A stretch of 63,996 bases of DNA, counting the filler, from Bigelowiella natans CCMP2755 (Eukaryota > Protista > Cercozoa), in NCBI GenBank assembly GCA_000320545.1. It is 5 parts of 5 records of this genome, joined end to end, with 100 filler letters (N's around TTAATTAATTAA, not from the genome) between each part and the next. Parts side by side here need not be neighbours in the genome. Positions count along the whole stretch, not along the records: positions 39,834 to 59,406 come from ADNK01002629.1; 4 more parts are not named here. One strand, given 5' to 3'. The position numbers and the translations under genes were made by a program. Shown piece by piece: positions 39,834-59,406 of the stretch. The notes below the pieces were generated by a model. The model worked only from the letters and a program-made list of their open reading frames with translations, searched no databases and was not told where the DNA came from. Within the stretch, counting starts at the first letter, position 1, and the number at the start of each line of letters is the position of its first letter.

Positions 39834-41160
39834 GGGTATGTGGACGCTGCAAACCAAGCGTACCTCTCGGGATTATTGGCCCAGCGGGCATGTAAAAAGG
39901 GTGATGCAATCCGAGAGAACATCGTCAAAAGGGGCGGGGGAGGGGTGAGGGGGGGGGGGGGAGGGGTTAAGAAACATGGAGCGCTCAACCTCTGCACACA
40001 CACCGTTCTCCAGTAGAACGTTTGTATCTGAAGAATGATTATTCGCGCCACAGTCGAGGGGCCAGGGAGGCGCATCTTTGGGTAAAGGCAATGAAGGCAA
40101 GCATGGGCTGACCGAAGAGGAGGAGGTGCGTCACCACGCGTGTTAGAGCGACTGATCGATCATCGTAGTAGAGAGGCAAAGCAGGCCAGTGGGCGGCGGT
40201 GCGGATACGGGTTTTGATGTAACAATGGTTTTTCTCATAATGCGTGTAGTTTGATAGAAGAATAGACTCCAAGTTGGACAGGATTGGTGGGGCTCTTGGA
40301 AAGCTTTCGGTAGCGTGCGCCTTGAAGATCATGTGCAGAGAGTGGGAGAGAGGGGGGGAGGGGGAGAGAGACCGAGTTTGATTGTGTCTTCGCAATACAT
40401 TTAGACAAAGCATACAAGATACAAACCTATGTAAATAGTATGGGTCTTTACCATGTATGCTATCCTCTCTCCTTTCGCCTTTCGATAATAGAGTCGTTTT
40501 GCTGTGAAACGCCAATCGAAAAACGGGCGAATCACAGTCGGAAGACGGGCGAATCGCTGCGTTTGCTAGTCATCGTCTCTAATTGCCACGCGCTCCTTAT
40601 ACCTCTACTGTGCGGATTCTTTTTCCATCGTGTCTTTATCAGAGTTTGGCAGGGGACATGGGTGCAGAGCTCCAGTTTCAGGTGTTATATGTGACGGTCC
40701 TTGTAGAAGACATCGTGGTGTGCCTTAAGCACTCTTGTGCACGATGCGACGGTGATGATGATGATGATGATGATGATGACGATGAATGGCTTTTGCATCG
40801 AGCTGGAGGCAGCGTTTTTTCGATGTTTTGGGAGTCAAATGCGACGTTGCCTTTATTTGATAAGTACGGTTGCTTAAGTTGCCTCTAAAATCCAATCGTA
40901 ACCACCCTCGTCGTCGTTCAGAGCAAAGTGCTCATACCGGAGCTAGATACGAGAGTAGAGACCTCCAAGGAGAGGACTAGGGTGAGTGCATAGAGTCGTA
41001 TATCGATAGGATATATGTTATGTATGAATGGTCTTGTGTGGGGGGGGGGGGCTTGTGTGTGTGTGTATGTGTGTGCGTATGTGTGTGCGTATGCGTGTGT
41101 CAAATATTGGACTTTGTTCGAATACAGGCGTTGAATAAGAGAACTCGCAAGTTGCTTTAA
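39834..41160 (+). CDS. 3' part of a hypothetical multi-exon protein
   Basis: Putative exons GYVDAANQAYLSGLLAQRA|LERLYLKNDY..., SLAGDMGAELQFQ|SKVLIPELDTRVETSKERTR|ALNKRTRKLL*, with GT-AG boundaries. No family recognised. Confidence 0.35.
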
Positions 41161-42483
41161 GCCGGACGGCGGCTTGTTGTAGTTAATCTATACGATTGGA
41201 TCCTCCCTAATTATTGTTATGGCGAGTACCGAGTACTGCGAGGTTTTTAGTTTTTTAGAGTCAATCTCGCTCGCAAAAGGAAGGCGTCCATTTTTTATCA
41301 TCCGTCAGCTCAAAAGAATCAGTTACGATTTCTTGAATGTATAATGTATAGCAGCGATCGTTTGTACGTATGCCAACGTCACATCATAGGACCGCAGAAT
41401 CATCAGAGCGGCATCAGTCATTTTGACGATGCAATGCGTTCCGATTGCTTGTGTATTCACCTGTGACTTACGTTCCGTAGGCTGTGATTGCATAGTGTTG
41501 TGTCAATGATTGCGAGTATAACTGTTTGCATGCACATCATCCAAATTGCAAGCTCGTTAATGCACGAGATGATGTAGTTTAGGCAATCACTACGTACCAT
41601 GCATGATGACACATTTTTGGGCGATTTGTAGAATTCGCTGGCATCGCACACCTAGACATTTGCATGCCGCAGGCTCTCAAGCACCGTAGATTCCAAATCT
41701 TATCTGTTGCATGCTCAAAGCACAAGAGCTATCCAACGAATTAATTTGCGCCAAGCTATCAACAAGGACGATGGATGGTGAGTCCATTCCTTCAACGTGA
41801 CAAATGAGCAGCAAAAGAGAAACACAGGATCACTGCAACGCGCGATTATTATCGCGCAATGACTAGAACAACATGTCACATACATCAGGATTGTACAAGT
41901 CGTGTGCGTTTTGCAATGTGCATAGCAAGTTGGCAAGCTGTGTATCCATTACACATGTGTTTTCGCGTACTTCTTGCTAAATGCATTGCAAATGCATCAC
42001 AAGTTTCCAGATATAATTCTAGGATTTTTGTTTGATTGCAAGTGTCTTGCGCCTGTCACATGCGCGCTGTACTAGTGCAAAGCACGCAAACATGCTAGCA
42101 TGCTGGCATGACTAGATGGTGTGTGTGCTGTGCTATCCACAGTTCGTTAAAACATCCTAAAGGTTTGTCATGTGATTGGCAGCGCAAGAGCGCTAGAGCG
42201 CACTCATTAAGCATTTGCGCAATGTTAAACCTTGCAGAACGCGCGTTTTCTACTAACCATAGCATGCCGCAATGACAGCATGCCGCAGCTAAACGCAAAA
42301 ATAAACACTATGTGGTGCAATATGCACTACGCACTAGCGCACTGCTAGACTAGCGCACGCTAGCACGTGACACGTCTAGTACATGAAGCTGTTTCTAAAT
42401 TCTCGATCCGCTAATGCTCTGCATGCATTCTTATAGCTGCCCGCTGCATGAAATATATATCATATTGCATGTCTATCATTGAA

Positions 42484-45370
42484 TCACCAATCGGCGCCAA
42501 ACATGGTCGACATGGCTAAATGCTTCTCGAAATGGTTTGCGAGAAGATCATAGTTCTTGTCCCTCCGAGAAGCCTGCTGTTCCAACGAGGGCGCACCTCC
42601 CTCGCAACAGCCCTTCTCTGTCGTCCCAGCCTTGTTGGCTTCTCCATTAGCTGATTCATTCAAATCGGTGATGTCTTTGTTCTTATGAGCACATTTGGAC
42701 GAACTGCCTTCTCCAGTCGCGGGTCCCATTCCCGCCCTTCCATACACCCCATGTTTTGCATCTCCACAGTCGTGACGACGAGGACCACATCGCTCTCCAC
42801 CATCTGCCGCTGTCGGGGCATCGAGACTAGCAGGTGACGCAGAGCCCGTGTCTCCTGCTTTGTTGTCATCTCTCGGCGCTAGCACAGACGCGAGGAAAGC
42901 TAATCTGAAAGCAGCATCGTCAAATACCCCGTGGAGATAGGTACCCCAGATGCGCCCTCCTAGCACCGAAGCTCCATCGACCCAGGAAGCGTCAGACGAG
43001 GGCCATTTCTTGCTGCCACCTCTCGGTTGCTTCATAATCGTGGGGCACACAGATAGTTGAAACATGGGGACGGTACCTGCCCTTGGCCTCGTGTCTCCCA
43101 GGTGTATTTCGTACCCTGACACGCGCACACCGTACAGCCGCGAAAGGGGCGAGCCAGCTGCAGTATGGTTTGCCGGTGTTGAATCGGACGATAAAGGAGA
43201 GTTCTTCATCACGCAGACGCCAGCGCAACGCCGCAGAGCTTTCTCGCTTTGGGACTTCATTTCCGTGTCCACCGGGAGAAACCCAAGGCCGTCCGTCATG
43301 CCAGGTTCGCCATCGTAGCCAGCCGGGTCCGAAATTGAATGGCCCTTTTCACACACCGGAAGTAAGGAGCGAACAAGAGGAAAAACTATTTTTTGGCGGG
43401 TGACGGCATATGAATGGAGTTTTTAGAAATAGTGATGCTCTATCGTCTTGCAGCGTAGTCGTCCCTACCATCATTTGATAGCCGCCACAAACGCCCACTA
43501 GATGCGCTCGCCTTCTCCTTGTGCGGCTGATGATCATTGGCATGTTATTTGTCGTTATTGCCTTTAATACAAATAGCGGCTCAATCCCATTCAAATACGG
43601 AAATTCATGGGGCAGTCATTGGAATCAACTACAAGAACACTCCGGCAACGCATCGCCTTTTTTTTAAAACTTTTTCCTTCAAATGTGAATCTACTGCTAG
43701 GTTTCACTTGCACCGCCCGGCCTATTGCTCACTTCTCTTCTCCTACAGCTCACTTCCCTGCTACCTCTTCTGCTCCGCTTCGTTGCTGAGTTCTGATGAT
43801 ATTTTGTCCCGAAAACTATTGAGAGCATCAGCCCATCCCTCTTCACGGAGCCATCTCAAGTCAAATCTGCAGAGGCGCGACAGAACATAGTGTTTGACTC
43901 AGCGTAATTAGAGCGTAAAATGAAAATATGTCGCATGATCTCCTATCGCCAGGAAAAACTAAACTATATATTAAGACAAAGGGTACGTGTATGACATGCA
44001 TATCTTCTAGACACCGGCGCGTACACGCGCACACTCTCTCATCTTCTCTCTGTTTGCGCCAACTCGCGTTACTCGTAACATAAGAGAACGTGTAGCAATA
44101 AGTAGCGAAGAGTAGCAGACGATAGTATTTAGAGCAGAGCATGTATTAGAACAAATGGCCACCTAACGTTCTTGGATCCAGGTATTATTACTACATCGTA
44201 CTGAGAAAGGTCTTTGTTACGACGGTGTTGAAGAAAATGGAGATCTGAAAAATGCAGTGGCGCAAGCATATAAGAGTACATCGAAACACACGCTCACACA
44301 CACAAATAACACCAGAATACACTTATATACACATATATCAAAGAAGCACATATATCATATGTATAATATATATATATATATATATATATATGTGATAGTT
44401 ACGACAACGAGAGAAGAATACGACACAAAGAAAAACGGACAATGCAAGGAAAAAAAGGCGTCCACGACAGTCGCAATTATGAAGTCAATCATCAACATCG
44501 ATGCCTCGTGTGTACACACCAACGCCTTCTTCTCGAGCCAGTGGCAAAAAGTCCGTGAAGTTTGAGATATGCGGAAGATAAAGCACCTGATAAGCACACA
44601 TTCTTACCGTTAGACTAACTGCAAGATGACAAGAAGCCATATTAGTTCTCTCTATGCGACACAAAGTGATTTGGAGCTATCAGGCTACGTCCTCTGAAAA
44701 AAACGGAAACGTGCACTATCGAGGCACATCCGGCGGCTCTGCGCGCCCTCGTGATTTCGAGGAGGAGGAGGGGGGGGAAAAGATATCCGTCATTTCAAAA
44801 ATGGGAGTTTGGTGGGGATTCATGGCTTCTAAGGAAAAGCTCAAATTGCAATCAAACTCTAATATTACAGACCGCAATGGAAATTCTGTCTTGCTGCGCA
44901 GCCGATGCTTTCGCGACTGAGGACGCTTCTGTGGGAGGATCTAGCTTCGCGTGTAGAGGCAATGCATCCTCCGAGTCGATGTGAATGCTGACGAACGATG
45001 CGAATGAATTACACGCGAAAAGAGCAAAGGATTGTTGAAAATGCTATTTAATAACTCAAAGCTTCATATTGCCATAGAAAAGGCTTGATAATAATTGCCT
45101 TACCCTCGGAAGTAAGGGACGACTCCCAAAACAGGTATTTGGGTCTTCTCTTCGATGATCCTCACGCCGTCAGCAAACTATGCATAACAGCAATGAGAGG
45201 CGTAGTGCCAACAACGCATGCGCGCTGTGATTGAATTGTTTGCTATTGATCGACGATGCGTTGTAGGAGGCGACTCTGGTGCGTATTTGTAAAAGTAATA
45301 TCGATCGTATGGTAGGCTATACATTGCTCAATGTGATTGCAGACATTATCTGATTTGGGGCAATTTTACA

Positions 45371-45410
<40 letters not shown>

Positions 45411-46621
45411 CACACACACGCGTACGCGCATCCATTCAAGGAAATCCGGAAAACATAATGCGCATGGTATACCGATGTTAAGTTACCAGTGTTGGATCTC
45501 CTCGAAACTTATTGATGATGATGCCTTTGATTCTTCACGAATAATTGAAGAGGATGGGGAAGGGGAGACCGTTTGTGGTGATAAGGATTTCATTAGCCAA
45601 ATATTAAACGACAATCTATCGTATTCGATCGTCGGCCTTTACCCCCTTTCCATCTCTTTTCCTTTCTATATCTCTCCCATCACTTTGCGCGACGGATATA
45701 GATTGAAAGGGTTCTTATATCAAGAGCAAGAGACTACCTTTGCCGTTCTCGTGGAGACAAAAGCATTATCGTCCCTATTACTTGCGCAAAAACCCCGCAT
45801 CTGTATAATTTTGTAAATTTAAATTTTTATCACAAATTACGTGCGTTATAGGGTAAGATAGTGAGCGAGAAAGAATTATAATCATCACACATCCTGGTCA
45901 CAGGGAAAACAATCAAATACGGCATTGATTCATACGGATATTGACCACAAATGTTTCCAAATACACGCGCTCTTTGCAAGCTTATATATGATGGTGATAA
46001 TGCTAACAACACACCCCAGAACTACCACAAGTTCTATGACCCTACCTTTCAATATCAGCGACCAAAATAACCTCTGTATCTCCTATGTTTGCCGCCCAGA
46101 AATTCACAAGATCCCTTCAATTATCATCGATATTTCCAAGTTGTGTTGATTGCTCAGGGGTACTATGAAAAGGCGCAACTGCAGCTTTGCATTGGCCTCG
46201 ATGCATATACATTTGGGAGAATGGGAATCACCGATTCTTTAAGTTGAGTTCCGCACAGCTCCCCGCCCCTTCCATGATGACGACGTCGTAGTTGTCCTAG
46301 AATAGTTATGTTACTTCAGAAAGTCCTCTTGATGTACACACTGGACGAGTCGGTCAAATTCGTTATTTCTTGGTCTTGACATCTCGGTGAAGATGACAAG
46401 ATTCGAGGTAGCTGGATGGAGAATCATCGCGCTAACAGCTTTAATTAATACAATCGCGTGATGACCGTTGGGCAGTTACTCTATAACCTTCAATGCTCTC
46501 AGAGATCTTTTAACCGCAACACGTAAGTCGCTATTTTCCTTCTTTTTCCAAATCTAGTATCTGATTGTGTTAGACGATAAAGGTGTGGTCAGACGAAACA
46601 ACAATATGCCGTGCACACACC

Positions 46622-46653
<32 letters not shown>

Positions 46654-47749
46654 AGCATTCGAACATGCACAACTATATTGTAGAAATATAGTGCTCGGAA
46701 GTGTTTGTTTTTAGCAAAGAAAACTTCGCCGTCCATTTGGCCACAACATCAGCTGCTGTCGCATTTCCCCCTCATCTTAACAGGACTGAGCACCTCCTTG
46801 CGTCGATGTTTGACCGCGAAACCCCATCCACAACAACCTGGCAGCCCACATCCGTGCTCGGCTGCATATATACGTACAACGCGCCGATATTAGATAGAAA
46901 AAGACGCGCAGCGACAGATACCCAGTTGTTCCTGTATCTCCTAGTGTATGATAACCATAACTACAAGTGTTACAGTTTGCCATAGCACCAGTAGACATCG
47001 CGTGCCATCGTCGCATTGATAGTAACACTGGCTTGCTACCTTAAGAAGAACCGGGTTCATCGTATGCTCTGCCTCACACCTCGCTGCTTCAGCCTGTACT
47101 GCTTGTGCCCTTCGTAGAGAAAGACATGGTATCACTGTTTTCATATTTGTTTATTATGTTTCGCTTTCGAGCAGAATTCCTTGCATGTTCCGATTCATAG
47201 CAATTCATACCGAAATAATCGAGTAGCTCACCTCGAAATCTCCCGCCCTTTCAGCGTGACGAAGGAGTTATTGCTCATATTCTGCGCCTTGAAAGGCGCA
47301 ACTTTAAAGCCTCTGTTATTCAGTATTCTACATAGAGCCGTGCAGACCTTGATAGAATCGTTTTAAAGTTGATGTTAATGGAAAGTGGAGGACGGCATTA
47401 TGTACGCACGTCGTTGGCGCATACGCGACCGCATGCCCAACCGACGAAGAACATCACCAATGACTTCATGTGGTTAGTTATAAGTGCTAATTCTCGTTTC
47501 TACAGTGAATCTTTATTTGCTGTACCACACTCTTTCCTACATCGGTAGCGGTTCCAAACACAGCGATAACACGTGCTCCCCCCCCTGCGAGGTATAAAGC
47601 ACGTTTAACTCTCATCTGCACATAAAAGCAATAGATTTCTTTCGACCAACTCCCCCAGCTTTTCTCCTTTTGCCTGCACGGGCTAACAGACGGATGAGGG
47701 CTTGCAGACCGACGGCAGCGGCGACGGACGCTGCCGTCGTCGTCGCCAT
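42484..47749 (-). CDS. cobQ: Cobyric acid synthase (CobQ/CbiP), full length, about 16 exons, N-terminal hydrophobic+basic extension
   Basis: [15 protein letters not shown]|VCTALCRIL...[13 protein letters not shown]...EISR|AQAVQAEAA...MNPVLLK|PSTD; [18 protein letters not shown]; DLVNF...VILVADIER|[10 protein letters not shown]; [12 protein letters not shown]; IPVLGVVPY; DSED; [10 protein letters not shown]; IIPGSKN; GVCGGYQM; GYEIHLG; [11 protein letters not shown]. Confidence 0.95.
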
Positions 47750-47975
47750 TGCAAATGCTGGAATATTCGACGCAGGTTTTCGAAAATCCGAAAGCAACGA
47801 CGAATATCTAGGAAATTGTGGGGAAAAACACCTGTCGTTCAAAATATATCCCCTTTGTTTTAAGCATCGCCACTATCACTTTTTGAAAAATAAAAATTAC
47901 AGTTTTAGTAGGTTTCCCATGCAATATGACGATGCGACATGGCATTTGGAAAGATTTTTTTTTTTTTTTTTTACC

Positions 47976-48370
47976 TCTAGCTAGCTACTCGTAGCTAGCT
48001 AGTTGAGTCTTCCATGTACATGCGTGCCTGGGTAGCTGGGTGTCTTGATCATCACAATGATTTCTGGATGTGCTGCACACTGCTAGACTGAGCAGAGCTC
48101 GGTGCGATCACAACAGTCATTGCAATGAAAAGTAGAATGAGAAGCGAAAATCGGTGCACCGCTAGCAGATTGCCTGCATGCTAGCATGCCCACTTGCTAG
48201 CTAGCTAGCTAGCTTTGGCTAGCTAGCTTGGGGATGTGCTGATGTCTAGATGTGTCCCTTTGGGGCTGATTTGTCAAAACTCTGCCCATCGTTTGACCAC
48301 ATCCTTCGCACATGTTTTGGCTGTCTACATCTAGTTCCTAGCTAGCTAGCTAGCTGTGACTATGCTAGTA
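47976..48370. repeat. CTAG-rich, otherwise TpA-poor intergenic tract between codA and cobQ
   Basis: gctagctagctagctagctttggctagctagc and cctagctagctagctagc. It starts sharply after a poly-T run. Confidence 0.8.
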
Positions 48371-48678
48371 TGTGGGGATTTGTTTGTTCTGTGCAAGGCT
48401 GCAACGAGGAACTCGAGAACTCGAGCAACTCATTGCATCATGTCAGCTGCCAGCTATCTACAACATCAACGCCACGCCGCACGCATATTGCATGGAATTA
48501 CGAAAATTGTAGCCGCAGCACATATACGTAGACATGCCACTTTGATGATGACGGTTAACGTAACACAAGCTAGCAAGTCTTTCTAGCTTTACACCTCGTA
48601 TTACTTTTGGATATGCGTCTTGATGTTGCGTGCCAACGTATCAGCTCGTCGCACCATGCGCTTTATGCTGCGCTCTAT

Positions 48679-48821
48679 CTACTTGTTGAAGTTGCCAATG
48701 TCAATCGCCTGTGTAAATTGGTTCAGCAAGGATATGAACGACGATGCAAACGGAATATTGTTTTGCAAAACAAAACTATTTTTCAATGCGCTTTCTATAA
48801 TTTATACACACGCACACACAA

Positions 48822-48862
<41 letters not shown>

Positions 48863-49598
48863 GTAAATAGTAAATACATATATATAACATCGCCATCATT
48901 CTGGTTCCATAACGCATATATAAGTAGACTTTCTTAGCCCCCCCCCCCCCATCCCCCTCTTCTATCTCCTCCAAAACTGTCAAAATAAACCCATTTAACC
49001 TCATCGAAGACCGATGTCTTCGCAGGGTGATTCTCTGCGATCACCATTCCTTCTCGCACAACATACGCTGGAACCCGCCTTACACAAATCAGTGACATTT
49101 GTGAGTTATCAATCCAGCAATATGACAAAGACCTCCTTGCAAACGGCAAGGGAGAAAGAAGCTCTATATGCAAAACGTCATCGAAAGAAGCGATTCTGTT
49201 CTCCAAAAAACAAATTGATGGCCGTTGTTTTGTTTTATTTTTTCCGCCATTAATTCTCGGCTATTGCTGCTTCATCTTCCCTTTCAGCTCTTGTATCCTG
49301 CCCTCCCTTCCTTCTTCCCCATAGCAGATGCTCGGTGTAAATTGATAGCATCTAAGATAGTTGGCACTGACCTCAATCGAATAATGTCTATAGGGTCGTT
49401 GAGCGAGTGCACGAGGAATTCAGCGGTTTCTCCTGGAATAACGTGGTGATTGTTTAGTTTGAGCGATGGTTCTAAGGGCCTTGGCTTTCTTGTTCTCTCC
49501 TTTACCCCCTTGCCTCTCCTTCTTCCTCCCTCTCTCTCATTCTCTCCCTCTCTCTCTCTCAGTGTGTGTTTTGTGCGTGCAAAAATAGGGAAAGACTA

Positions 49599-49632
<34 letters not shown>

Positions 49633-50025
49633 ATATATAAATATATGTTCATGCTGTTGTGAGCATCCATTATTCCTCATCACATCTACTATTCTTCATT
49701 GCCTTCAGCTATTTTGGGAGCTCCCCCAAAGGGCACATGGTTGTCCGAAACCTACGCAATCAGAGCACAGATCCATCAATTCGTTGGAGCGTCGTCAAAG
49801 CCATTCAAGAACACGCAACCGATAGAAACAACTGATTTTAAGCTTTTAACGCCGAACGTACCATCATCTGAAAGACGCGCCTCATTTCTTCTTGACCCTG
49901 TACGACGAAGTTGGAGGCGATAGCAGTATTGTACAGTAGTAGTTATAGTAAGAAGGACATAACAGCGGAAGATTAGAATGACGATAAACGATGATTATTG
50001 ATTTGTACCTGGTAGTCTATAATAC

Positions 50026-50072
<47 letters not shown>

Positions 50073-51145
50073 TATTCAAGCTGTATATGTGTAGATATTA
50101 TCTTACACACAATCATTTCATTAAATTCCATCATAATCCCTACATGCAGTTGTATTATGTGACGCTAGGTGCAAGCAACCAAACTCGTCTGATTTGCATT
50201 CCTCCACTGTGCGTCACTCTTAACTAATATCATAATACTCTGCAGTAGTACGACCGATAGGTGGCAAGCATGCACGAGCATGTAAGCTGCGTCCAGTAGG
50301 TTCCCCATGCCTTTAGATGCAAATACAATGACCCATACACGTCGTCATCATGATAAATAAACCACAGTGGGTACTTCCTCGAAAGACGCAAAAAGACACC
50401 GAACCCGTGCATTGGCCGATAGTAAATACGACAGGTATTATATCGTTGATAATATCCAGTAACAAGAAAAACCACTGGGATGGCAAATGTGCTATGGCGC
50501 TCTCCCAGAGCCAACACTCTATCTAGACCGCATTTTCCCTTCAGTCTCACGCAAGAACATCGAAGCTTACATTTAAAAAAGACCCCCGTAGTATTAGTTG
50601 CAAATGGCAGCCTGAAACTACAACGATGACGCACCTAGCGGATACCATGGATCTACCACGGAGTCATGGCCAAGCCCGACTTTATTTCCAGCCTACGTGT
50701 TTACATCAAACAACCGGAATAAGTGCAGATTTGATTGAGGACAAAACTGATAAATCCGCATCATTCGGCGATTTTATAGCTAAACTACGCAAGATTCTGC
50801 GTCGTTTTAATGCAAACCACAGAAAGCACAAGGTGATACGGCACCTGAAGAAGCTCTGGAACGCGTGCAAGTCCTCTTCTTTTCGGGTAGTTGTCAAATC
50901 GGCCCTACCATCGCACAGGCATCGTTACAAGCATCTTTCTCTATTTGCGTTTCATTTCAGGTGTGCACCGATAAAAGTATAGTCGGTATTGGCTATAACA
51001 ATCATCTTATCGTCTACCCTCCCCCCCCCCCCCCCCCTTTCGTCTATTTTTTATCGTTTGTCCCTTTTACCTGGAGAACAATGCTGTCTAGCGGGTTCGT
51101 CACGACCTGTAATATTTGGCAAACATATAGCAATGCATATCTAAA

Positions 51146-51183
<38 letters not shown>

Positions 51184-52077
51184 ATATGTATTCTCTGTAT
51201 ATATGTGTTTTTATTTATGTGTGTTTGTGTGTGTGATTGTGTGTGTATTAGCCCCCCCTCTCTCTTAACGACCTGCACTTGAGCTCTATTAATAGCCGTG
51301 AGTACCTGTAAGTAGGAAAATAGATATTGACAAGTTTGAAGAAAATTGATGATGAGGAGGATATCATCTTCACGATCATTTCTTTGACTAATCTCCTTAG
51401 TATATATATATATATATATATATTATATTTATACATTACATATGATACGCAGGGATGAAAGAGAATAGTTCAGTTATTGAGTCGATGCTCTCCTCCTCCC
51501 CCCCCCCCTCCTCCTGACCTTGTTGGCAGCAGGTCCATTATACGAATGCATTGCTGTGCAATGACCCGCAATTACGTGACCTCCCATATCACTGAGATGG
51601 ATTGCATGCAGGGCAAACGAATGTGTTAAAACACACAAAACAAGCTACAAATGTGCAAATCGCAGGTCTGGTACCGATCTTGAGTGAGCTGGCAAACCTT
51701 TGACCCGCACAACACAAACACACAGCAAAAAACAGCGATTCATTACAACTATAGCAATTTATCCTTCAGCCGTGAAAAAACGGTATTGTTGGTATGAGTA
51801 GGATTTGTCCTTCTATGGGTGCATGCGTGTGCATGTGTGTGTGTGTGTTTGTGTGTGTGTTTATGTGTATGTGAGGGAAGGAGAGAGAGAGAGAGAGAGC
51901 TGACGTATCACATCATTACCGTTTCAATGTGCCTTGAGTGAGGGTCGTCAGTCTCATCACAATGAACGTCGATCATTGCCCTAAATGACGTTGAAGTATA
52001 CTATATCTATGGTATAATAAGATAATAATAATAATAATGCTATATAACAATAATAATGATATATAACTTATATATGC

Positions 52078-52115
<38 letters not shown>

Positions 52116-52420
52116 GTAAGGTGTTATTCTTGATGAAATCGCATAGCAAGGCCTGAGACCACTTCGTGCGAGAAGATGATAAGTCATCATTACTTCCATA
52201 TAGCCTAAGCGCTAAATCTACTACCCTCTCCGCTCAGCAATCTCGAAGGCCATTCTCAATGACTCCGTCGCCTCCTACCAATGAAATCGCAACCCCGGTG
52301 AGTTGTTGTTTGGCGCAACAACGTGGAGAGATGCAATGACCAAACGCGCGATGAAGAGAATAGATTCAATGTGTCCATGCATTATCATCTTGAGTATTAG
52401 GTTACATATTTACAGGATAT

Positions 52421-52470
<50 letters not shown>

Positions 52471-52739
52471 TGTCACACCTCTCTAGTCCTTTCCAAGTGC
52501 GGAATAGCGCCAATAGCATCAATATTAACTAATACGAATTACATATGGCACAGAGACGATTACATAGTAAAGGAGGGAGAGGGGGGGGAGGGGGGATGGT
52601 AGGATGACAGCCTGCATAATAGGTTGATAACGTGCAAGCTGATGGCTTACGCTTTGTGGCCCACTCGAAGTCCTTCTTGTTCTTCGTTGTGGTGAGAATT
52701 CCATCTTGGGGAAATCCGACAATCTGGAGAAAGATAGAC

Positions 52740-52795
<56 letters not shown>

Positions 52796-52836
52796 GGAGA
52801 GAGAGAGACGGAGAGAAAGTGAACGACAAAGAGTAA

Positions 52837-52867
<31 letters not shown>

Positions 52868-53056
52868 TGATATCTCTATACATTTTATATTTAGGTGTAG
52901 ATCTGTATTTAGCGACTAGGCTTTATGATGCAGCAAAACCATCGCGTCATCCCAAACTGACTTTCACAAAAACTATACACACTCCCTCCTCTTTCGTCTA
53001 CACTCGATCTTATTCATTCGAGCAGTATAGTGCAAATATTTGAGATGGGTTTTTCC

Positions 53057-53100
<44 letters not shown>

Positions 53101-53620
53101 ATATTATTGAGATTATGCATACTAATATTTATCAATATTTCTTTTTTATAATTCTGATATCAAATTTTATTTGGGGGACCTGCAAAGAGCAAAGATTCTC
53201 TTTCTTCACCGACTCTTTGAGGTCTACGAGCGCCTCCACACTGCAACGAATAAAACCAATGAACAATGGCGGAGAACATCACCAGCAGCAGCAGCGTACA
53301 TTGCGTTGTTTGTGGGGATTGATGTTCAGAATTCGCTTTGCATCTTTGCAGTACGACTAACGAGCTCACTTACACGCGTGGAGGGGCCGGCCGATCATCA
53401 TTATTACTTTTTTATTTAATTCGTTATTATCTACAATCTATAGACTGGACAAGCTATGTAATCAATGCTGCGGCATTTCAAGTTTTCAATCTTTTCTTTC
53501 GGATGTGTTCTTTCCGATGAGGAAAGAACGATTTTGATCGTCAAACCGCACCCAGCAGGGCATCCTGTATCCGCATGGGTACGGACCCTTGTAGTTCCAC
53601 ACGCGACCTTGATTTACCAT

Positions 53621-53658
<38 letters not shown>

Positions 53659-54672
53659 TGTATGCAACATATTTGTATCAATAATATTATATGTATATGT
53701 ATATATATAAAAATATGTATACGATGATCACATGCATCTTGCATTTCGTGACGCGGATACACATTATCTACTGATGCGCTGGTTTACCATCCATTTAAGA
53801 GCGAGCGTGGCACGGCGACGGACATCGTCTCCTGTTACCCCCTCCTACTCAAACAGGTGTATACTTATTGTAAGAAAATCGGAACGTAACGTGAAACAAC
53901 ACGCCCAGCAGCTGCATTTCTTCTTCGAGATCGAGCGTCTCTTTATAGCACCTTCGCCTTTGCCCAGTTTGCTATTCCTAATACACCATGTATCCAATCA
54001 AACGTCGCATATCCGAAACGCTCACAACCAGCGGCAGAGCGAGCAAGCTCGATTCACCCGCAGCAGAGAGGATAAGATGCATGTTTGAATTCTTCGATCG
54101 TGGGATATTTACACGCTACTTAGGGAATGATGATGCGGTAGCTTTGTAGCACCAACACCGAAGGTTGTTGGGAGAATCCTCGAGTGTCAATAAACTATTG
54201 AAATCAGTTATATTCTCAGTATCTAGGTCGTGTACCCTCGACTAATGTTCCTGATATATTTTGCCATTCTTTTCCGATTAGGACAGCATCCTGTTTTCGG
54301 GGTGTTTTGGAGATAACAGCGAACAAAGAGCAACGAAACAATTCATTCGAGCTGCTTCCGTGGTAATTTCGGGCAGTGTTTATTGCTACGCACTATGTGA
54401 TACTTGAGGTTGGCACACATGCCTAGAGATGTGTGAAATCGCATGGTGGACAAGGAAGCAATCATATTTGTGTGTGCGCTGCTTTTATCGGCCAGTGGCA
54501 ACCAGGTGAAGATGCGGCTCGGCGTAGGTAGGAGTCACGAGATTGCCCCCTGTAAGCAGAGGAGAGGACACTTGGTAATGAGAATATTTGAGGTGTCGGG
54601 ATATATTTCGCATCTATTACGATTCGATGAGAACAAGGTCACACAGTAATGGAACTAGTAACGTTTCTAACT

Positions 54673-54719
<47 letters not shown>

Positions 54720-55278
54720 CTCTCTTTTCCCCCTTCCTCTCTCTGTGTCGCCTATCCTTCATGTAACACACACAATGCGCAGACTTGAGTACACCTGCAT
54801 CAATCACTCTGATCCCCGGAGCGTTCTGTTGAAGATAGTTATGTTTGAAATCAGAGAGTTCCAACAAAACCGTGTCCTATAAGGCACTCAAGTTCAGTAT
54901 TGTCGCCTAGTTGGCGAGTCTACCTCTGGTGCAGGCATATCAGCTGGTGTAAGCTTCAAAATCTCTCCAGATTCACCAGAAACATGAATATTTTTCAGCT
55001 CATACTCAGCCGCATCGTCCTCCTGTGTGTTTGTTGGATTTGGGGGGAAAGTAAGACGTTCAACAAACAATTCCACTGAACCCATGCTGCTGAAATCTTC
55101 GTGAAGATAGATACAGTTGAAAACTTACCCATATCCTTGCGTTTGTAACCACGAAGTCTGACCGGACTGTGCTCAGATGGCGGAGACCCGCTGCCGCATT
55201 TAAGCTCTTCAAGCTCTTTCCCTGGCTGTTCAGCCTCTGTAGAAGCTGCACGCACGGTTTCTTAGCGCGGTTGATCAT
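48679..55278 (-). CDS. codA: Bacterial-type (amidohydrolase-fold) cytosine deaminase, about 20 exons, with putative mitochondrial presequence
   Basis: AEPHLHL|DA, NISGTLVEG|IANW, VRTHAD, IVGFPQDG, IGAIPHLERTRE, IDVHCDETDDPHSR, AGHCTAMHSYN, VTNPL, GRFDNYPKRRGLARV, GLGHDSVVDPWYPLG|MGNLLD and VVREGMVIAENHPAKT. These are colinear with E. coli CodA as remembered. Confidence 0.93.
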
Positions 55279-56047
55279 ATTTATCCAGGACGCTGGCTCC
55301 CTGGAACGTTTTGGAAATCTGACTCGCCTGTATCGTCCTCCGGATAAATTAGACTAGGGGGGGGGGGTGGAGAATAATAGAGCACCTCTTTCTCTTTGCT
55401 TTTTGAGGATCCATTTTTTGTCGCACACCTGAAAAGCATTCCATTTTTTATTGAATTTCCCTCTAAAATGGCATAGGGAAAAACTTAATCCGCAGCGAAA
55501 TGGAGACGCCGGGCAAAGTGCCGTTTGTAAGACCGTCCGGTCCTTTACCAAAATTCATTTTTTCGCAAATTTTATTACATTATCCATAGAAATGTGGAAT
55601 TTTTGGTTGGCGTAGGTAAATACCACAGGTATGGCACGTTGTTTCTGGATCAGATATAAGGTTCAAAACTGATTCAATGGAACGGTTCAACTGCAGAGTT
55701 CACACTTCATTTGACAACTCTGTGTCTTTCTCTTGGGATGATGTTGTCGCCCTAACAAAATGTCAAGAGTTCTCTTCGGTCGACAGTGTTCGTTTCTTTT
55801 CGTCCAGCCTTAACTGCTCGTACATTTATTCGTAAGTGGCGTGAAAAGTCATTATTTTTTTTATGACGACAAGGGAACTAAACATTATTATTTCAAAATA
55901 CATCGCATTTTAGTGATTTTGTCGTTTTATTGGAGACCATGGAAGCTGAATGTTCGACTAATTCTTTTGTCTTCGATCCCCCCTTGCCTCTGGCATATAC
56001 CCCCTTCCCCTCCCCACACTCTTTTGATACTAGAAGGGCAACATCCG

Positions 56048-56915
56048 ATGCAGTCATCATCGGGGACGGCGATGATAAGGCTTCTTTCCCCTACTCAGTC
56101 GTCCCCCTCCTCTCCTTCAAATGACCTTCAGCGACAGCTCGAAGAGTTGAAAGCTGAAGCGGGGAAAAAAAGGCGCTCTTGGACCTCCATTTTCGGATTC
56201 GAATGGCTACCGTCGTCGCTACTACGCCCATTGATAGACACACATTCATCTTCAACCACACAGTCGCTTCTTCCTTCCTTCTCAAAGGTCGACGCCAACG
56301 ATGGGAAGCGGGACCATGCGTTCAATAACTACTTTACAGCTGAACACGACGGATGCCACTCCTCCTCCTCCTCTCCGACCCACAACTCTGCCCCGACTTT
56401 CGTTCCGGATGTTGGCATGCTTGATCTGGACGATGGGGGGGAGATGGTTGTTCGGGAAAGGTCGTATGGATCGTTCTCGTCGCTGGTAAACAAAATAAAA
56501 ACCCTGTTACACGATGTTTCACTTTCTTCGCGTCCTGCTTATCGTCTGCTTATCTTGTCATCATCAAAAATGATGATAATAGGTATCGTCCCTAACATTA
56601 ATATCTGACCCTGTGACGCTAAAGCAATGGGTGCGCTTTGCCTTTTTGCTCGGAATAATTACGCTGGCAGCAAACGCCATACAAGGCGGACTAGCTTTCT
56701 GGCTGGGTAAATTCTTTGTTTTCCCACATTTACTTTTAAATAATTTCAAAGCGTGCTCTCTTTACTATTTATTCGATAGAAAAACGACTATTTCTCGCCA
56801 TTTCTCCGCAGATCAACAACTGAATGTGAATATAGTTGAATTCATGGACTTCTCACTTGTTTCTAGTTAAATTGATTCCAATTTCTTATCCCACGCACTG
56901 AGGCAATTACTACAC

Positions 56916-56969
<54 letters not shown>

Positions 56970-56981
56970 CAATATATATAT

Positions 56982-57017
<36 letters not shown>

Positions 57018-58888
57018 ATGTAAACTGCAGGTTGCCAAACATCCTCAATAGCCTTAATGAACTTCAGCATAGATTCTTACGTCGAGGTAGTACACTCATC
57101 AGCACACCATCGATCCAATGACAGCATGCTACATCAATCACTACATCGCCACATCATACTACGCACATGCTTGAATGCATGTTATTGTGTTTATGAGAGT
57201 GGGGAGGGGTTGAGGGGAGGGGTTGAGGGGAGGGAAATGACGAGTAAAGCGCGAAGAGACGCATATGCGAAGATTGGTTCAACCCTCCCTCCAATTTAGG
57301 TTCTTTCAGCAATTCTTACAATCATACGGTTAGCCTCCGCAAAAACAGGTCGATTATTCTTCTTTTACCTTTGTTACTCCGTGCATGTTATGCTACTGTT
57401 CTTGGCCAGTCAAGGGCTCGTACAACACGCTGTTTCTTGCACGTTTTCCCACGCAACCGACGTCTAGCCATAGCAGTGGTTGCGAGCGAAACGATGGTTC
57501 TTCTTCGATTCGTCGGTCGCGCAAAATACTGTTTCTTTTTACGATTAAACACACCTAAATACGCCTCCAATTCTCATAACTGTTTGCCGTATGCTTGGAC
57601 GCGCTAGGGCGGTGCGAGGAGGAGGAGCGATTGCTCGTTACCCCCCGGAAGTGCAGCTATGACGGTGGCGAGGAGGGCGACGATATGCACGGCAGCGCGG
57701 TTGGGACGTGTGCCGATAACTCCCTGGACGCATCATCGTCTGTCAATAGCTGTTATCAATACAAACGGCAGGGTGATACGAAGGACAACGACACGGTCGT
57801 TACGCTGGACGCTGTTCCTCCTAGCAGCTTCGAGGCGCGAGCAGCAAGCTCGAGCACTTCTATAAGGACGCTTCGCAATAGCAGCAGGCCTCCTTTCACT
57901 CAAATTACCAGTAAGGAGGAGGAGGAGGGGGAGGAGGTGGAGGAGGAGGGTGACAGAAACAATGCAATCATGATTGAGGAGATAAAAGGCGGAAAGAGGA
58001 GGAAGGAGGCTGAAAGCTATCGTGACACATCAGCGAGAAAGCTGAAGGCAAAGAGGCCAGGCAAGGGCGAGGATACTTGCTACTCTCCCAGATTGCTGTT
58101 TCCTCCTACTACTAGTAGTGCGAATGCCGGCTCACAGAGTGCTGCATCTTCCTCCGTATCACCGCCCTGCCCCCTCTCCTCCTCCTCCTTGTCCTCACAA
58201 ATTAGCAATGCAAAGAGCTCAGCTGGCAGAGTTTTCGAGATGGAAACAATGAGCATCAACGGAAAAAGACAGCCTAAAGAGGACATTAAGGAGGAGGCGG
58301 CGATCACGAGGCAGGGAGGGTATACGATTGGAGATAAAGACTTGAGAAAGCAAACGAAATTCCAACATAGCTCTCCCCCCACCAGCGGCAGTAGAGGAGA
58401 CGACTTGTCTCCAAAGAAACGAGGGATAATATACGGAGATATCAACTCTAGATTTCGAGAGGGCATTGGCCAATATAAAAGTAACCCCCCCCCACCCCCC
58501 CCACCTTTCCCCCCCCCCCCCATCGTATTGAGTAGGCGCAGAGACCGGTGATTTTTGAGATTGTCATTTCTTCGAGAAGAATGGAACTTTCATTTAACAA
58601 TATGCAAGATACGAATTGCTGTAAATCGTCGTCCTAACTAGAGAGTCAGGATTTGGATATGGGGTTTGTTTGGGGAGGTGGGGGGGGTGGGGGGGGGGTT
58701 GATTTGTGGGGTTGATTTGGGATTGTGATTCCCACTGCTACTGCTGCTGGATGTGATGCGTATGTGTAGGTACCACGAACTTCACGACGATTACTACTGA
58801 AACGTCATCAACGCGGAAAGTTGGGATAAATTATATATATATATATATATATATAATATGTGTGTGTGTGTGTGTGTGCGCATTTGTG

Positions 58889-58929
<41 letters not shown>

Positions 58930-59308
58930 ATATTCAGAGTTGATATACATAAACCATAGGAATGGAGACGGCACATGGCTGAGAAGGGCTTTTCATTAGT
59001 AAGTACAAGCAGCAGCACCATAGAAGAAGAGAAGAAGCAAAAAAACACGAAGAACCGCAATAATGAGTGTACTAAAATATGAATTAATATATATATATAT
59101 ATATATATATTCCGCGCGAGAATTTGATGGGAAAGCACCGCTACTACGAATGATATGTATTGCGTAACTCCCTGCAAGGTTATCGGTCTCCTCCTCCTGC
59201 TTCTAGCTATTGGGACATTCACGGCAGCAATATCCTCCGCATTGAGCAGATCTAGTGCTCCGGCAGCACCCGCAGAGAAAGAGGCAAAATCAAGAGCAGC
59301 CGCATATG
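56048..59308 (+). CDS. TMEM163-like / cation diffusion facilitator-related membrane protein, partial (cut by gap), with long low-complexity insert
   Basis: TM exons FLLGIITLAANAIQGGLAFWLG|CQTSSIALMNFSIDSYVE|VLSAILTIIRL, then after the insert AEKGFSL|VIGLLLLLLAIGTF. The S.AL..F..DS..E..S pattern fits this family. Confidence 0.6.
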
Positions 59309-59370
59309 GTGGGAGGCATTTCGAATTGCTTTGACCATATTACATATGTGTGCTATATATATGTTAATGC

Positions 59371-59406
<36 letters not shown>

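What the first reader, a model, noticed from the sequence alone, without database searches (positions are those of the whole stretch)
42484..47749. Intact, intron-rich cobyric acid synthase (CobQ/CbiP) in a eukaryote
Seen: the P-loop (GTATDVGKS), [16 protein letters not shown], the glutaminase Cys (GVCGGYQM) and His (GTYLHG) are all present. They are split by about 15 host-style spliceosomal introns, so this is not bacterial contamination. A roughly 35-aa hydrophobic-then-basic N-terminal extension resembles an organelle signal anchor. Known: de novo B12 synthesis is regarded as prokaryote-only. Algal remodelling involves lower-ligand enzymes (CobT/CobS/CobC), whereas CobQ amidates corrin side chains. 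Inference: a domesticated transfer used for salvage or repair of deamidated corrinoids, or part of a longer hidden pathway. One junction near 46550-46790 I could not resolve.
Basis: partly seen in the sequence, partly recalled or inferred. Interest (0 to 1): 0.8.

Follow-up and report, generated by a model that had tools for sequence, protein, structure and literature searches.

The report
Alga's intron-split cobyric acid synthase gene
This is a real nuclear gene of the alga Bigelowiella natans for a bacterial-type vitamin B12 side-chain amidating enzyme (CobQ), shared with a second chlorarachniophyte, but similar transferred genes are already reported in diatoms and this copy has a stop codon in one exon.

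Summary
A CobQ/CbiP gene lies on the minus strand at 47749-42484, in 17 exons with 16 GT-AG introns. The DNA is nuclear Bigelowiella natans (public model jgi/Bigna1/90598). A transcript from a closely related strain has ten of the introns removed cleanly and the intron 5 junction joined, so bacterial contamination is excluded.

Amorphochlora amoebiformis carries an orthologue (51-60% identity). Twelve of the 16 B. natans introns sit at the same position and phase there, and both proteins have the N-terminal hydrophobic-then-basic extension. The two form one clade among bacterial CobQ with no identifiable donor. This points to one old transfer into chlorarachniophytes.

Three corrections apply:
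- "Intact" is only partly true. With the transcript-supported splice sites, exon 6 of this allele has an in-frame TAG (46556-46554). The other strain is open there.
- The public model skips exons 6 and 7, which include EGAGS.
- Transferred CobQ/CbiP is already described in diatoms, so this is a new member of a known kind.

The function, corrinoid carboxylate amidation for salvage, is inferred and not tested. I could not search the rest of the pathway.

The parts
42484..47749 (-). Whole CobQ/CbiP gene of Bigelowiella natans from ATG to TGA. It has 17 exons, 16 introns and a 2091-nt CDS (696 codons plus stop).
   Evidence: Exon table. Identity of the organism and public model P0122 = jgi/Bigna1/90598. 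Exon GC is 0.527 against intron GC 0.417.
47647..47749 (-). Exon 1. It encodes the N-terminal extension [34 protein letters not shown]. The hydrophobic segment is encoded at 47737-47681 and a basic stretch follows.
   Evidence: A comparable extension is present in Amorphochlora P0124 and is modelled as a helix at residues 10-36.
47526..47584 (-). Exon 2, with the P-loop GTATDVGKS (47555-47529).
   Evidence: The intron after it is at the same position and phase as in Amorphochlora (66.0).
47232..47347 (-). Exon 3, with [11 protein letters not shown] (47296-47264).
   Evidence: NF001989 profile positions 17-55, E 4.6e-16..
47040..47109 (-). Exon 4 ([23 protein letters not shown]).
   Evidence: Shared intron positions 104.2 and 128.0.
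46794..46861 (-). Exon 5 ([22 protein letters not shown]), with donor GAG|gtgctc.
   Evidence: Transcript L001 bases 2-26 match 46818-46794..
46488..46560 (-). Exon 6. It is open in the transcript strain ([25 protein letters not shown]). In this window it carries an in-frame TAG at 46556-46554, inside a 17-nt patch (46560-46544) that differs from the transcript.
   Evidence: The possible in-frame alternative splices are listed.
46297..46487 (-). Intron 6 (191 nt, AAG|gttata ... ttctag|GAC). It is retained in transcript L001. Its position (175.0) is conserved in Amorphochlora.
46232..46296 (-). Exon 7, with EGAGS (46272-46258). The public JGI model omits it.
43469..46114 (-). Exons 8-16: 46114-46046, 45800-45738, 45532-45487, 45177-45104, 44987-44873, 44586-44520, 44244-44163, 43866-43765, 43526-43469. 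They carry [24 protein letters not shown] and the glutaminase Cys motif GVCGGYQM (43495-43472).
   Evidence: The transcript L001 has every one of these introns removed. Boundaries and peptides are and motifs.
42484..43344 (-). Exon 17 (286 codons plus TGA). It holds the rest of the GATase_3 domain with YEIHLG and GTYLHG (42945-42928), lineage-specific low-complexity inserts, and the conserved C-terminal [12 protein letters not shown].
   Evidence: Pfam GATase_3, E 9.7e-14.. The transcript continues to 42445, which is the 3' UTR.

Best explanation
This is the nuclear gene for cobyric acid synthase (CobQ/CbiP, EC 6.3.5.10 type) of the chlorarachniophyte alga Bigelowiella natans.

Origin. A bacterial cobQ entered the nuclear genome of an ancestor of Bigelowiella and Amorphochlora. 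It gained many spliceosomal introns and an N-terminal hydrophobic-plus-basic leader, and it has been kept in both genera.

The protein. It has the standard two halves. The first is a dethiobiotin-synthetase-like ATP-binding domain (P-loop, [16 protein letters not shown]). The second is a GATase_3 glutaminase domain (Cys in GxCGGxQ, His in YLHG).

Inferred mechanism. ATP activates a corrinoid side-chain carboxylate. Ammonia released from glutamine in the second domain converts it to the amide. This would allow the alga to complete or repair incompletely amidated corrinoids taken up from bacteria, probably as one step of a salvage route like the one proposed for polar diatoms. The leader probably tethers or targets the enzyme to a membrane or organelle.

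This allele. In the sequenced allele exon 6 carries a premature TAG. This strain may therefore make only a shortened or alternatively spliced product.

What is shown and what is inferred. Gene identity, exon structure, expression and splicing in a sister strain, conservation and bacterial ancestry are shown. Substrate, physiological role and localisation are inferred.
For: Family identity:
- The exon pieces hit the cobyric acid synthase equivalog models in colinear order.
- The public model P0122 scores 460.6 and 353.8 bits, and the Amorphochlora orthologue P0124 scores 566.7 and 441.8 bits, against cut-offs of 273 and 309.9.

Host gene:
- The same-allele cluster member is jgi/Bigna1/90598, EukProt Bigelowiella natans.
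- There are 16 GT-AG introns.
- The MMETSP transcript L001 is 98.5-100% identical in its aligned blocks and has ten introns removed.

Conservation:
- The orthologue lies in Amorphochlora genomic DNA with 26 exons.
- Twelve intron positions and phases are identical.
- All catalytic motifs are invariant across 36 sequences.
- The two algal sequences are monophyletic (SH-aLRT 100) and sister to a broad bacterial clade.

Fold:
- The model of P0124 has pLDDT 85.8. It shows a CTP-synthase-like two-domain architecture, a GatD-like C-domain and a dethiobiotin-synthetase-like N-domain.

Leader:
- The N-terminal leader is conserved in character in both genera.

Precedent:
- Transferred CobQ/CbiP with other late cobalamin genes is reported in diatoms and interpreted as scavenging and repair (10.1101/2020.01.24.918219).
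Against: - Exon 6 of this allele has an in-frame TAG with the transcript-supported splice sites.
- The only transcript that covers this part retains intron 6.
- No transcript evidence was found for exons 1-4 (one search was blank).
- The window allele carries derived amino-acid changes, one of them at an otherwise invariant alanine.
- No other cobalamin gene lies in the 19.6-kb piece or next to the Amorphochlora gene.
- I could not check whether CbiB, CobU, CobS and the other late genes exist in these algae.
- No enzyme assay exists for any eukaryotic CobQ in the literature I could search.
Confidence: 0.7

Rival explanations
1. In the sequenced strain the gene is a recently inactivated allele, a young pseudogene. 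The lineage had a working CobQ, but this copy no longer gives a full-length enzyme.
For: - There is an in-frame TAG at 46556-46554 inside a 17-nt patch that differs from the otherwise about 99% identical transcript.
- The public gene model had to skip exons 6 and 7.
- Of 7 amino-acid differences between alleles, the window allele is the odd one out at an otherwise invariant Ala and at two further sites where Amorphochlora agrees with the transcript.
- All transcript-derived proteins in the cluster carry the other allele.
Against: - There is no other stop or frameshift in 2091 nt, and all 16 introns keep GT-AG.
- Several in-frame alternative splices avoid the TAG. One uses the normal donor with the acceptor at 46530 and costs 10 codons.
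- The patch could be an assembly or sequencing error.
- The sample of differences is very small.
Confidence: 0.3
2. The enzyme is one step of a longer late cobalamin pathway in chlorarachniophytes (CobN, CobA/O, CobQ, CbiB, CobU, CobS and so on). This pathway would build cobalamin from bacterial intermediates such as cobyrinic acid a,c-diamide, and would not merely repair damaged B12.
For: - Some diatoms carry exactly such a set of transferred genes (and the supplement table).
- The CobQ product, adenosylcobyric acid, is useful only if CbiB and the nucleotide-loop enzymes follow. This rests on established pathway knowledge.
Against: - Nothing in the window or in the Amorphochlora locus shows another cob gene.
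- The genomes could not be searched with the tools at hand.
- No paper in the searchable library links Bigelowiella with cobyric acid or pseudocobalamin.
Confidence: 0.35
3. The protein has been put to a new use and amidates, or merely binds, something other than a corrinoid.
For: - The alga cannot make the corrin ring, so the canonical substrate must come from outside.
- There is a new membrane or targeting leader and there are large lineage-specific inserts.
Against: Sequence conservation is spread over the whole CobQ profile and is not confined to the ATP and glutamine sites. Scores lie far above the curated equivalog cut-offs.
Confidence: 0.08
4. The sequence is bacterial contamination or an assembly chimera.
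For: The nearest non-algal relatives are all bacterial, at 40-46% identity.
Against: - There are sixteen spliceosomal introns, and they are removed in a transcript.
- The flanks are rich in microsatellites, as in eukaryotic DNA.
- The orthologue has shared intron positions on a 964-kb contig of another alga.
Confidence: 0.01

Closest known systems
Bacterial cobyric acid synthase CobQ/CbiP (NCBIfam NF001989, TIGR00313)
   Same: It has the same two-domain architecture, and all conserved motifs are present. Scores are well above the curated equivalog cut-offs. Identity to bacterial members is 40-46%.
   Different: - It is nuclear and split by 16 introns.
- It has an N-terminal hydrophobic-basic leader of about 35-50 residues.
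- It has lineage-specific inserts after the PGSKN region, inside the glutaminase domain, and about 80 residues of low-complexity sequence before the C-terminal helix.
- There is no cob operon context.
CobQ/CbiP acquired by horizontal transfer in diatoms, e.g. Fragilariopsis cylindrus and Cyclotella cryptica (Vancaester et al., bioRxiv 10.1101/2020.01.24.918219)
   Same: A bacterial cobQ is resident in the nuclear genome of a B12-using marine alga. It is interpreted there as a scavenging and repair gene of the late cobalamin pathway.
   Different: - The host lineage differs (Rhizaria, chlorarachniophytes).
- Whether the origin is shared with the diatom genes was not tested, because no diatom sequence was at hand. 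No protein with a diatom name was among the 120 best hits.
- The companion genes are unknown here.
CTP synthase, and the MurT/GatD amidotransferase (structural analogues)
   Same: A dethiobiotin-synthetase-like ATP domain is coupled to a glutamine amidotransferase domain. These are the top Foldseek matches to the model of the orthologue, at E 3e-13 to 5e-12.
   Different: Sequence identity is 10-20% and the substrates differ. These are analogies of architecture and mechanism and do not indicate family membership.

Membership tests
Cobyric acid synthase CobQ/CbiP (NF001989 / TIGR00313) | The whole-protein score is above the curated equivalog cut-offs. | tested here: met
   P0122, the public model of this gene (which lacks exons 6-7), scores 460.6 and 353.8 bits against cut-offs of 273 and 309.9. 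The orthologue P0124 scores 566.7 and 441.8. The exons of the window, tested one by one, hit the profile colinearly.
Cobyric acid synthase CobQ/CbiP (NF001989 / TIGR00313) | An N-terminal ATP-binding synthetase domain with a P-loop (GTxxxVGKS), the [11 protein letters not shown] motif and EGAGS. | tested here: met
   The motifs lie at 47555-47529, 47296-47264 and 46272-46258. The orthologue's fold has a dethiobiotin-synthetase-like N-domain. Caveat: exon 6, which lies between these motifs, carries a TAG in this allele.
Cobyric acid synthase CobQ/CbiP (NF001989 / TIGR00313) | A C-terminal GATase_3 glutaminase domain with the catalytic Cys (GxCGGxQ) and His (YLHG). | tested here: met
   Pfam PF07685 at E 9.7e-14. 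GVCGGYQM lies at 43495-43472 and GTYLHG at 42945-42928. Both residues are invariant in 36 sequences.
Cobyric acid synthase CobQ/CbiP (NF001989 / TIGR00313) | Catalyses ATP- and glutamine-dependent amidation of adenosylcobyrinic acid a,c-diamide. | not testable with these tools
   This needs complementation or an enzyme assay.
Cobyric acid synthase CobQ/CbiP (NF001989 / TIGR00313) | An uninterrupted reading frame in the copy at hand. | tested here: not met
   With the transcript-supported splice sites there is a TAG at 46556-46554 in exon 6. In-frame alternatives exist but are unproven. The frame is open in the other strain's transcript.
Late cobalamin salvage gene set acquired by transfer, as in diatoms | Bacterial ancestry with stable nuclear residence. 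| tested here: met
   Tree. Introns and spliced transcript. Shared introns with Amorphochlora.
Late cobalamin salvage gene set acquired by transfer, as in diatoms | Co-occurrence with CobN, CobA/O, CbiZ+CbiB and CobU in the same genome. | not testable with these tools
   No tool here searches the B. natans or A. amoebiformis genome. The flanks in both species show no cob gene.
Late cobalamin salvage gene set acquired by transfer, as in diatoms | A common origin with the diatom CobQ. | not tested
   No diatom CobQ sequence was obtained. No protein with a diatom name was among the best 120 hits.
Cobyrinic acid a,c-diamide synthase CobB/CbiA (considered) | A score above the cut-offs of NF002204, TIGR00379 and NF004921. 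| tested here: not met
   Scores are 27-33 bits against cut-offs of 254-354.

The most novel reading that the evidence does not exclude
Chlorarachniophytes keep a membrane-tethered or organelle-targeted CobQ, acquired independently of the diatoms. It re-amidates deamidated or incomplete corrinoids scavenged from seawater or prey bacteria. On this reading, corrinoid side-chain repair or completion has been recruited more than once in eukaryotic algae, and 'B12 auxotrophy' hides an ability to use B12 precursors.
Probability: 0.3. Interest if true: 0.6.

Novelty: new member of a known kind. Interest (0 to 1): 0.4.

Why it matters
Algal B12 supply shapes marine productivity, and eukaryotes are usually treated as pure consumers of finished cobalamin. 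A CobQ conserved in two chlorarachniophyte genera, alongside the diatom cases, adds a second, unrelated algal lineage that has kept a corrin side-chain amidation enzyme for a long time. That suggests use of incomplete or damaged corrinoids is a recurring strategy.

Amorphochlora would be a useful organism in which to test what a eukaryotic CobQ does and where it sits in the cell.

There is also a practical point. The public B. natans model 90598 is wrong, because it lacks the exons with the YYR helix and EGAGS. In addition, the reference allele may be defective.

Tried and rejected
- An exact-pattern scan of metagenome contigs for exon 6 gave 39 chance matches. None resembled the window, and the MMETSP assemblies are evidently not in that collection, so the scan was wasted.
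- A word search with the stop-free stretch that holds exon 2, meant to find N-terminal transcript ORFs, found nothing. Exons 1-4 therefore rest on homology, shared intron positions and GT-AG sites only.
- A sequence search of the PDB found no relative.
- Rfam found nothing in the piece.
- Pfam on ten long open stretches of the flanks gave no hits.
- A tblastx comparison with the Amorphochlora locus showed only the cobQ exons and microsatellite noise, so there is no visible synteny.
- The 17-nt transcript patch is not found elsewhere in the window, so a micro-exon was rejected. The window's own patch is unique.
- The journal version of the diatom paper is not held. Its preprint supplement lists B. 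natans in the data set but gives counts for diatoms only.
- CobB/CbiA membership was rejected on score.
- Contamination was rejected.
- I did not send the joined 696-residue spliced model to any search or fold tool. I used the exons by reference, the public proteins P0122 and P0001, and the orthologue P0124. The only joins were inside scripts. In one search I joined candidate exon 5 and exon 6 pieces to test reading frames. In one search I strung the exons together only to compute GC content.
Full report
**What is there.** The piece 39834-59406 is AT-leaning eukaryotic DNA (GC about 0.36-0.55) with 31 tandem-repeat rows, mostly dinucleotide microsatellites. Tested one by one and by reference, these stretches hit the curated cobyric acid synthase models NF001989 and TIGR00313. 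The hits fall in colinear order along the profile: positions 17-55, 123-143, 143-166, 203-226, 272-299, 302-336 and 335-441. The last exon and the one before it hit Pfam GATase_3.

**Whose gene it is.** A word search with the last exon found a 526-residue protein, 98% identical, from the marine eukaryote transcriptome project (P0001). Its 90% cluster also holds P0122, which is jgi/Bigna1/90598 and EukProt Bigelowiella natans P005491. P0122 is identical to the window wherever the two alleles differ. The window is therefore nuclear DNA of B. natans, of the genome-project allele. The gene is already in public catalogues as an automatic model.

**Exon structure.** The transcript behind P0001 (L001, 1931 nt) aligns to the window in 12 blocks at 98.5-100% identity. 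Ten introns are cleanly removed and the intron 5 junction is joined across the patch described below. Combining this with tblastn of P0122, the Amorphochlora orthologue and a bacterial CobQ, I placed 17 exons:
- 47749-47647
- 47584-47526
- 47347-47232
- 47109-47040
- 46861-46794
- 46560-46488
- 46296-46232
- 46114-46046
- 45800-45738
- 45532-45487
- 45177-45104
- 44987-44873
- 44586-44520
- 44244-44163
- 43866-43765
- 43526-43469
- 43344-42484

All 16 introns are GT..AG, and every donor has G at exon position -1. The phases add up to 2091 nt, which is 696 codons plus TGA. Introns run from 62 to 309 nt with a median of 198. Their GC is 0.417 against 0.527 for the exons. Three introns contain microsatellites. 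This settles the contamination question.

The transcript joins 46794 (GAG|gtgctc) to an exon whose counterpart in the window starts at 46560 (aatcag|ATAC). In the transcript this exon reads [25 protein letters not shown]. That fits the conserved Y-[YF] motif of bacterial and Amorphochlora CobQ.

In the window, the first 17 nt of the exon (46560-46544) differ from the transcript at 10 positions. The flanks are about 99% identical. The frame reads R-Y-TAG, with the stop at 46556-46554. The transcript's version of the patch occurs nowhere else in the window, so it is not a separate micro-exon.

I enumerated all GT/AG pairs that keep the frame open:
- The normal donor with the acceptor aaaatag|CGA at 46530 loses 10 codons.
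- A weak donor, TCA|gtcctg at 46787 (A at -1, unlike all 16 real donors), with tag|ATT at 46553 keeps the length but loses the YYR motif.

Which of these, if any, is used is unknown. The public model avoids the problem by skipping exons 6 and 7. That skip happens to be in frame (138 nt) but deletes EGAGS, so the model is wrong.

**Intron 6.** Intron 6 (46487-46297) is retained in L001. This is why the transcript's ORF was called only from MEGAGS onwards. Its predicted removal (AAG|gttata ... ttctag|GAC) gives SLRALK|DNYD. That matches the Amorphochlora protein in length, and Amorphochlora has an intron at exactly this position.

**State of this allele.** Apart from the TAG there is no stop or frameshift. 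The two alleles differ at 7 residues in the part covered by the transcript. At the one column that is otherwise invariant (Ala in all others) the window has Thr. At two more columns Amorphochlora agrees with the transcript allele. The sample is small, but it points the same way as the TAG. The reference allele looks like the derived one and may be decaying. An assembly error in the patch cannot be excluded.

**A second alga has it.** The search with P0122 gave one further hit above the bacterial background. This is P0124 (591 aa, 51% identity by BLASTP, 57-60% in the alignments), a complete ORF from another transcriptome (L002). Its cluster mates are GAB5359542/3 of Amorphochlora amoebiformis.

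The Amorphochlora gene lies on a 964-kb contig and spans 19.8 kb in 26 exons. I mapped both intron sets onto P0124 coordinates. Twelve of the 16 B. natans introns have the same position and phase as Amorphochlora introns: 66.0, 104.2, 128.0, 150.2, 175.0, 196.2, 256.0, 280.2, 313.0, 335.1, 362.2 and 400.0. Two more have the same phase but lie in regions where the alignment is uncertain. Two are close but not identical. The gene was therefore already intron-rich in the common ancestor of the two genera.

No other chlorarachniophyte orthologue, and no protein with a diatom name, appeared among the 120 best hits.

**Ancestry.** In a tree of 89 sequences (IQ-TREE, quick search, LG+C20 PMSF), the two algal proteins are sisters (SH-aLRT 100). 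Together they sit beside a large, well-supported clade of CobQ from Verrucomicrobiota, Planctomycetota, Victivallales, Chlorobi, Myxococcota, Acidobacteriota and others. They lie apart from the alpha- and gamma-proteobacterial clade.

No donor can be named. The root is arbitrary, and no cyanobacterial or diatom sequences were included. No cyanobacterium was among the best 80 of 597 genome hits.

**The protein.** P0122 and P0124 exceed both curated equivalog cut-offs by a wide margin, and the CobB/CbiA models fail. In a 36-sequence alignment the P-loop, KAQNM, EGAGS, NxFRGD, SED, NFTD, PGSKN, GxCGGxQ, YEIHxG and Y-x-HG positions are invariant or nearly so.

No solved structure is related by sequence. 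An AlphaFold model of P0124 (pLDDT 85.8, pTM 0.85) shows an N-terminal helix (residues 10-36), a disordered basic linker and then the core. Foldseek matches were as follows:
- The whole chain matches CTP synthases.
- The C-terminal half matches GatD of MurT/GatD.
- The N-terminal half matches dethiobiotin synthetase.

This is the expected architecture of an ATP-dependent, glutamine-dependent amidotransferase. I did not fold or search a joined B. natans model.

**The leader.** B. natans has a hydrophobic stretch at residues 5-23 (mean Kyte-Doolittle 1.6), no acidic residues, and a net charge of +6 between it and the P-loop strand. Amorphochlora has a hydrophobic stretch at residues 13-31 and a net charge of +7 after it.

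The sequences are not alignable, but the design is the same. It fits a signal anchor that leaves the enzyme on the cytosolic face of a membrane. It also fits a signal peptide with a short basic transit-like part, or a mitochondrial presequence. I could not discriminate between these.

If intron 1 were retained, an ATG inside it would give [16 protein letters not shown]..., a form without the leader. This is only a possibility.

**Function.** From established knowledge of the family, CobQ/CbiP amidates the b, d, e and g carboxylates of adenosylcobyrinic acid a,c-diamide. These algae are not known to make the corrin ring, so the substrate must be taken up. Long-term retention of every catalytic motif in two genera argues that the chemistry is kept. 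Whether the enzyme completes bacterial intermediates, which would need CbiB, CobU and CobS downstream, or repairs deamidated cobalamins is open. I could not search the genomes for the other genes. The flanks in both species show none.

**What is already known.** A study of transfer events in diatoms reports CobQ/CbiP of bacterial origin, together with CobN, CobA/O, CbiZ+CbiB, CobU and BluB. [quoted passage not shown] B. natans was in that data set but is not discussed.

No paper in the searchable library combines Bigelowiella with cobyric acid or pseudocobalamin. B12-dependent ribonucleotide reductase is reported in chlorarachniophytes (PMC11439496), and B. natans is cultured with added B12 (PMC7883536).

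**Verdict.** It is a new member of a known kind: CobQ acquired by transfer in algae. The new details are conservation across two chlorarachniophyte genera with shared introns, and a conserved N-terminal leader. The claim of intactness fails for this allele at exon 6.

Noticed in passing
window 46232-46560 (exons 6 and 7): The public gene model jgi/Bigna1/90598 (P0122, 650 aa) joins exon 5 directly to exon 8. It therefore lacks 46 residues, including EGAGS. The skip is in frame, which probably hid the error.
   Followed up: yes
window 47585-47646 (intron 1): Intron 1 (62 nt) contains an ATG in frame with exon 2 ([16 protein letters not shown]...). If it were retained, the product would be a leaderless form of the enzyme. 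There is no transcript evidence either way.
   Followed up: no
window 39834-59406: The density of dinucleotide microsatellites (AT, TG/CA, GA/TC) is very high, with 31 tandem-repeat rows in 19.6 kb. Arrays lie inside introns 5, 10 and 13 of cobQ.
   Followed up: partly
window 57580-58548 (+) and 55814-56605 (+): There are long open stretches of 323 and 264 residues, Ser/Glu/Pro-rich, with no Pfam match. They are presumably exons of unannotated neighbouring genes. No other recognisable gene lies in the flanks.
   Followed up: partly
L003 10001-29754 (Amorphochlora amoebiformis): The two NCBI isoform models differ from the transcript-derived protein. P0231 carries a 22-residue insert in the glutaminase domain, and P0232 has a different C-terminus that lacks the conserved YxxLAxHF helix. 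These are probably alternative or mis-predicted splicing.
   Followed up: no
L001 1-1931 and cluster members P0121, P0123: All transcript-derived proteins in the cluster carry the non-reference allele. One (P0123) starts in retained intron 16 and L001 retains intron 6, so intron retention is frequent for this gene.
   Followed up: partly
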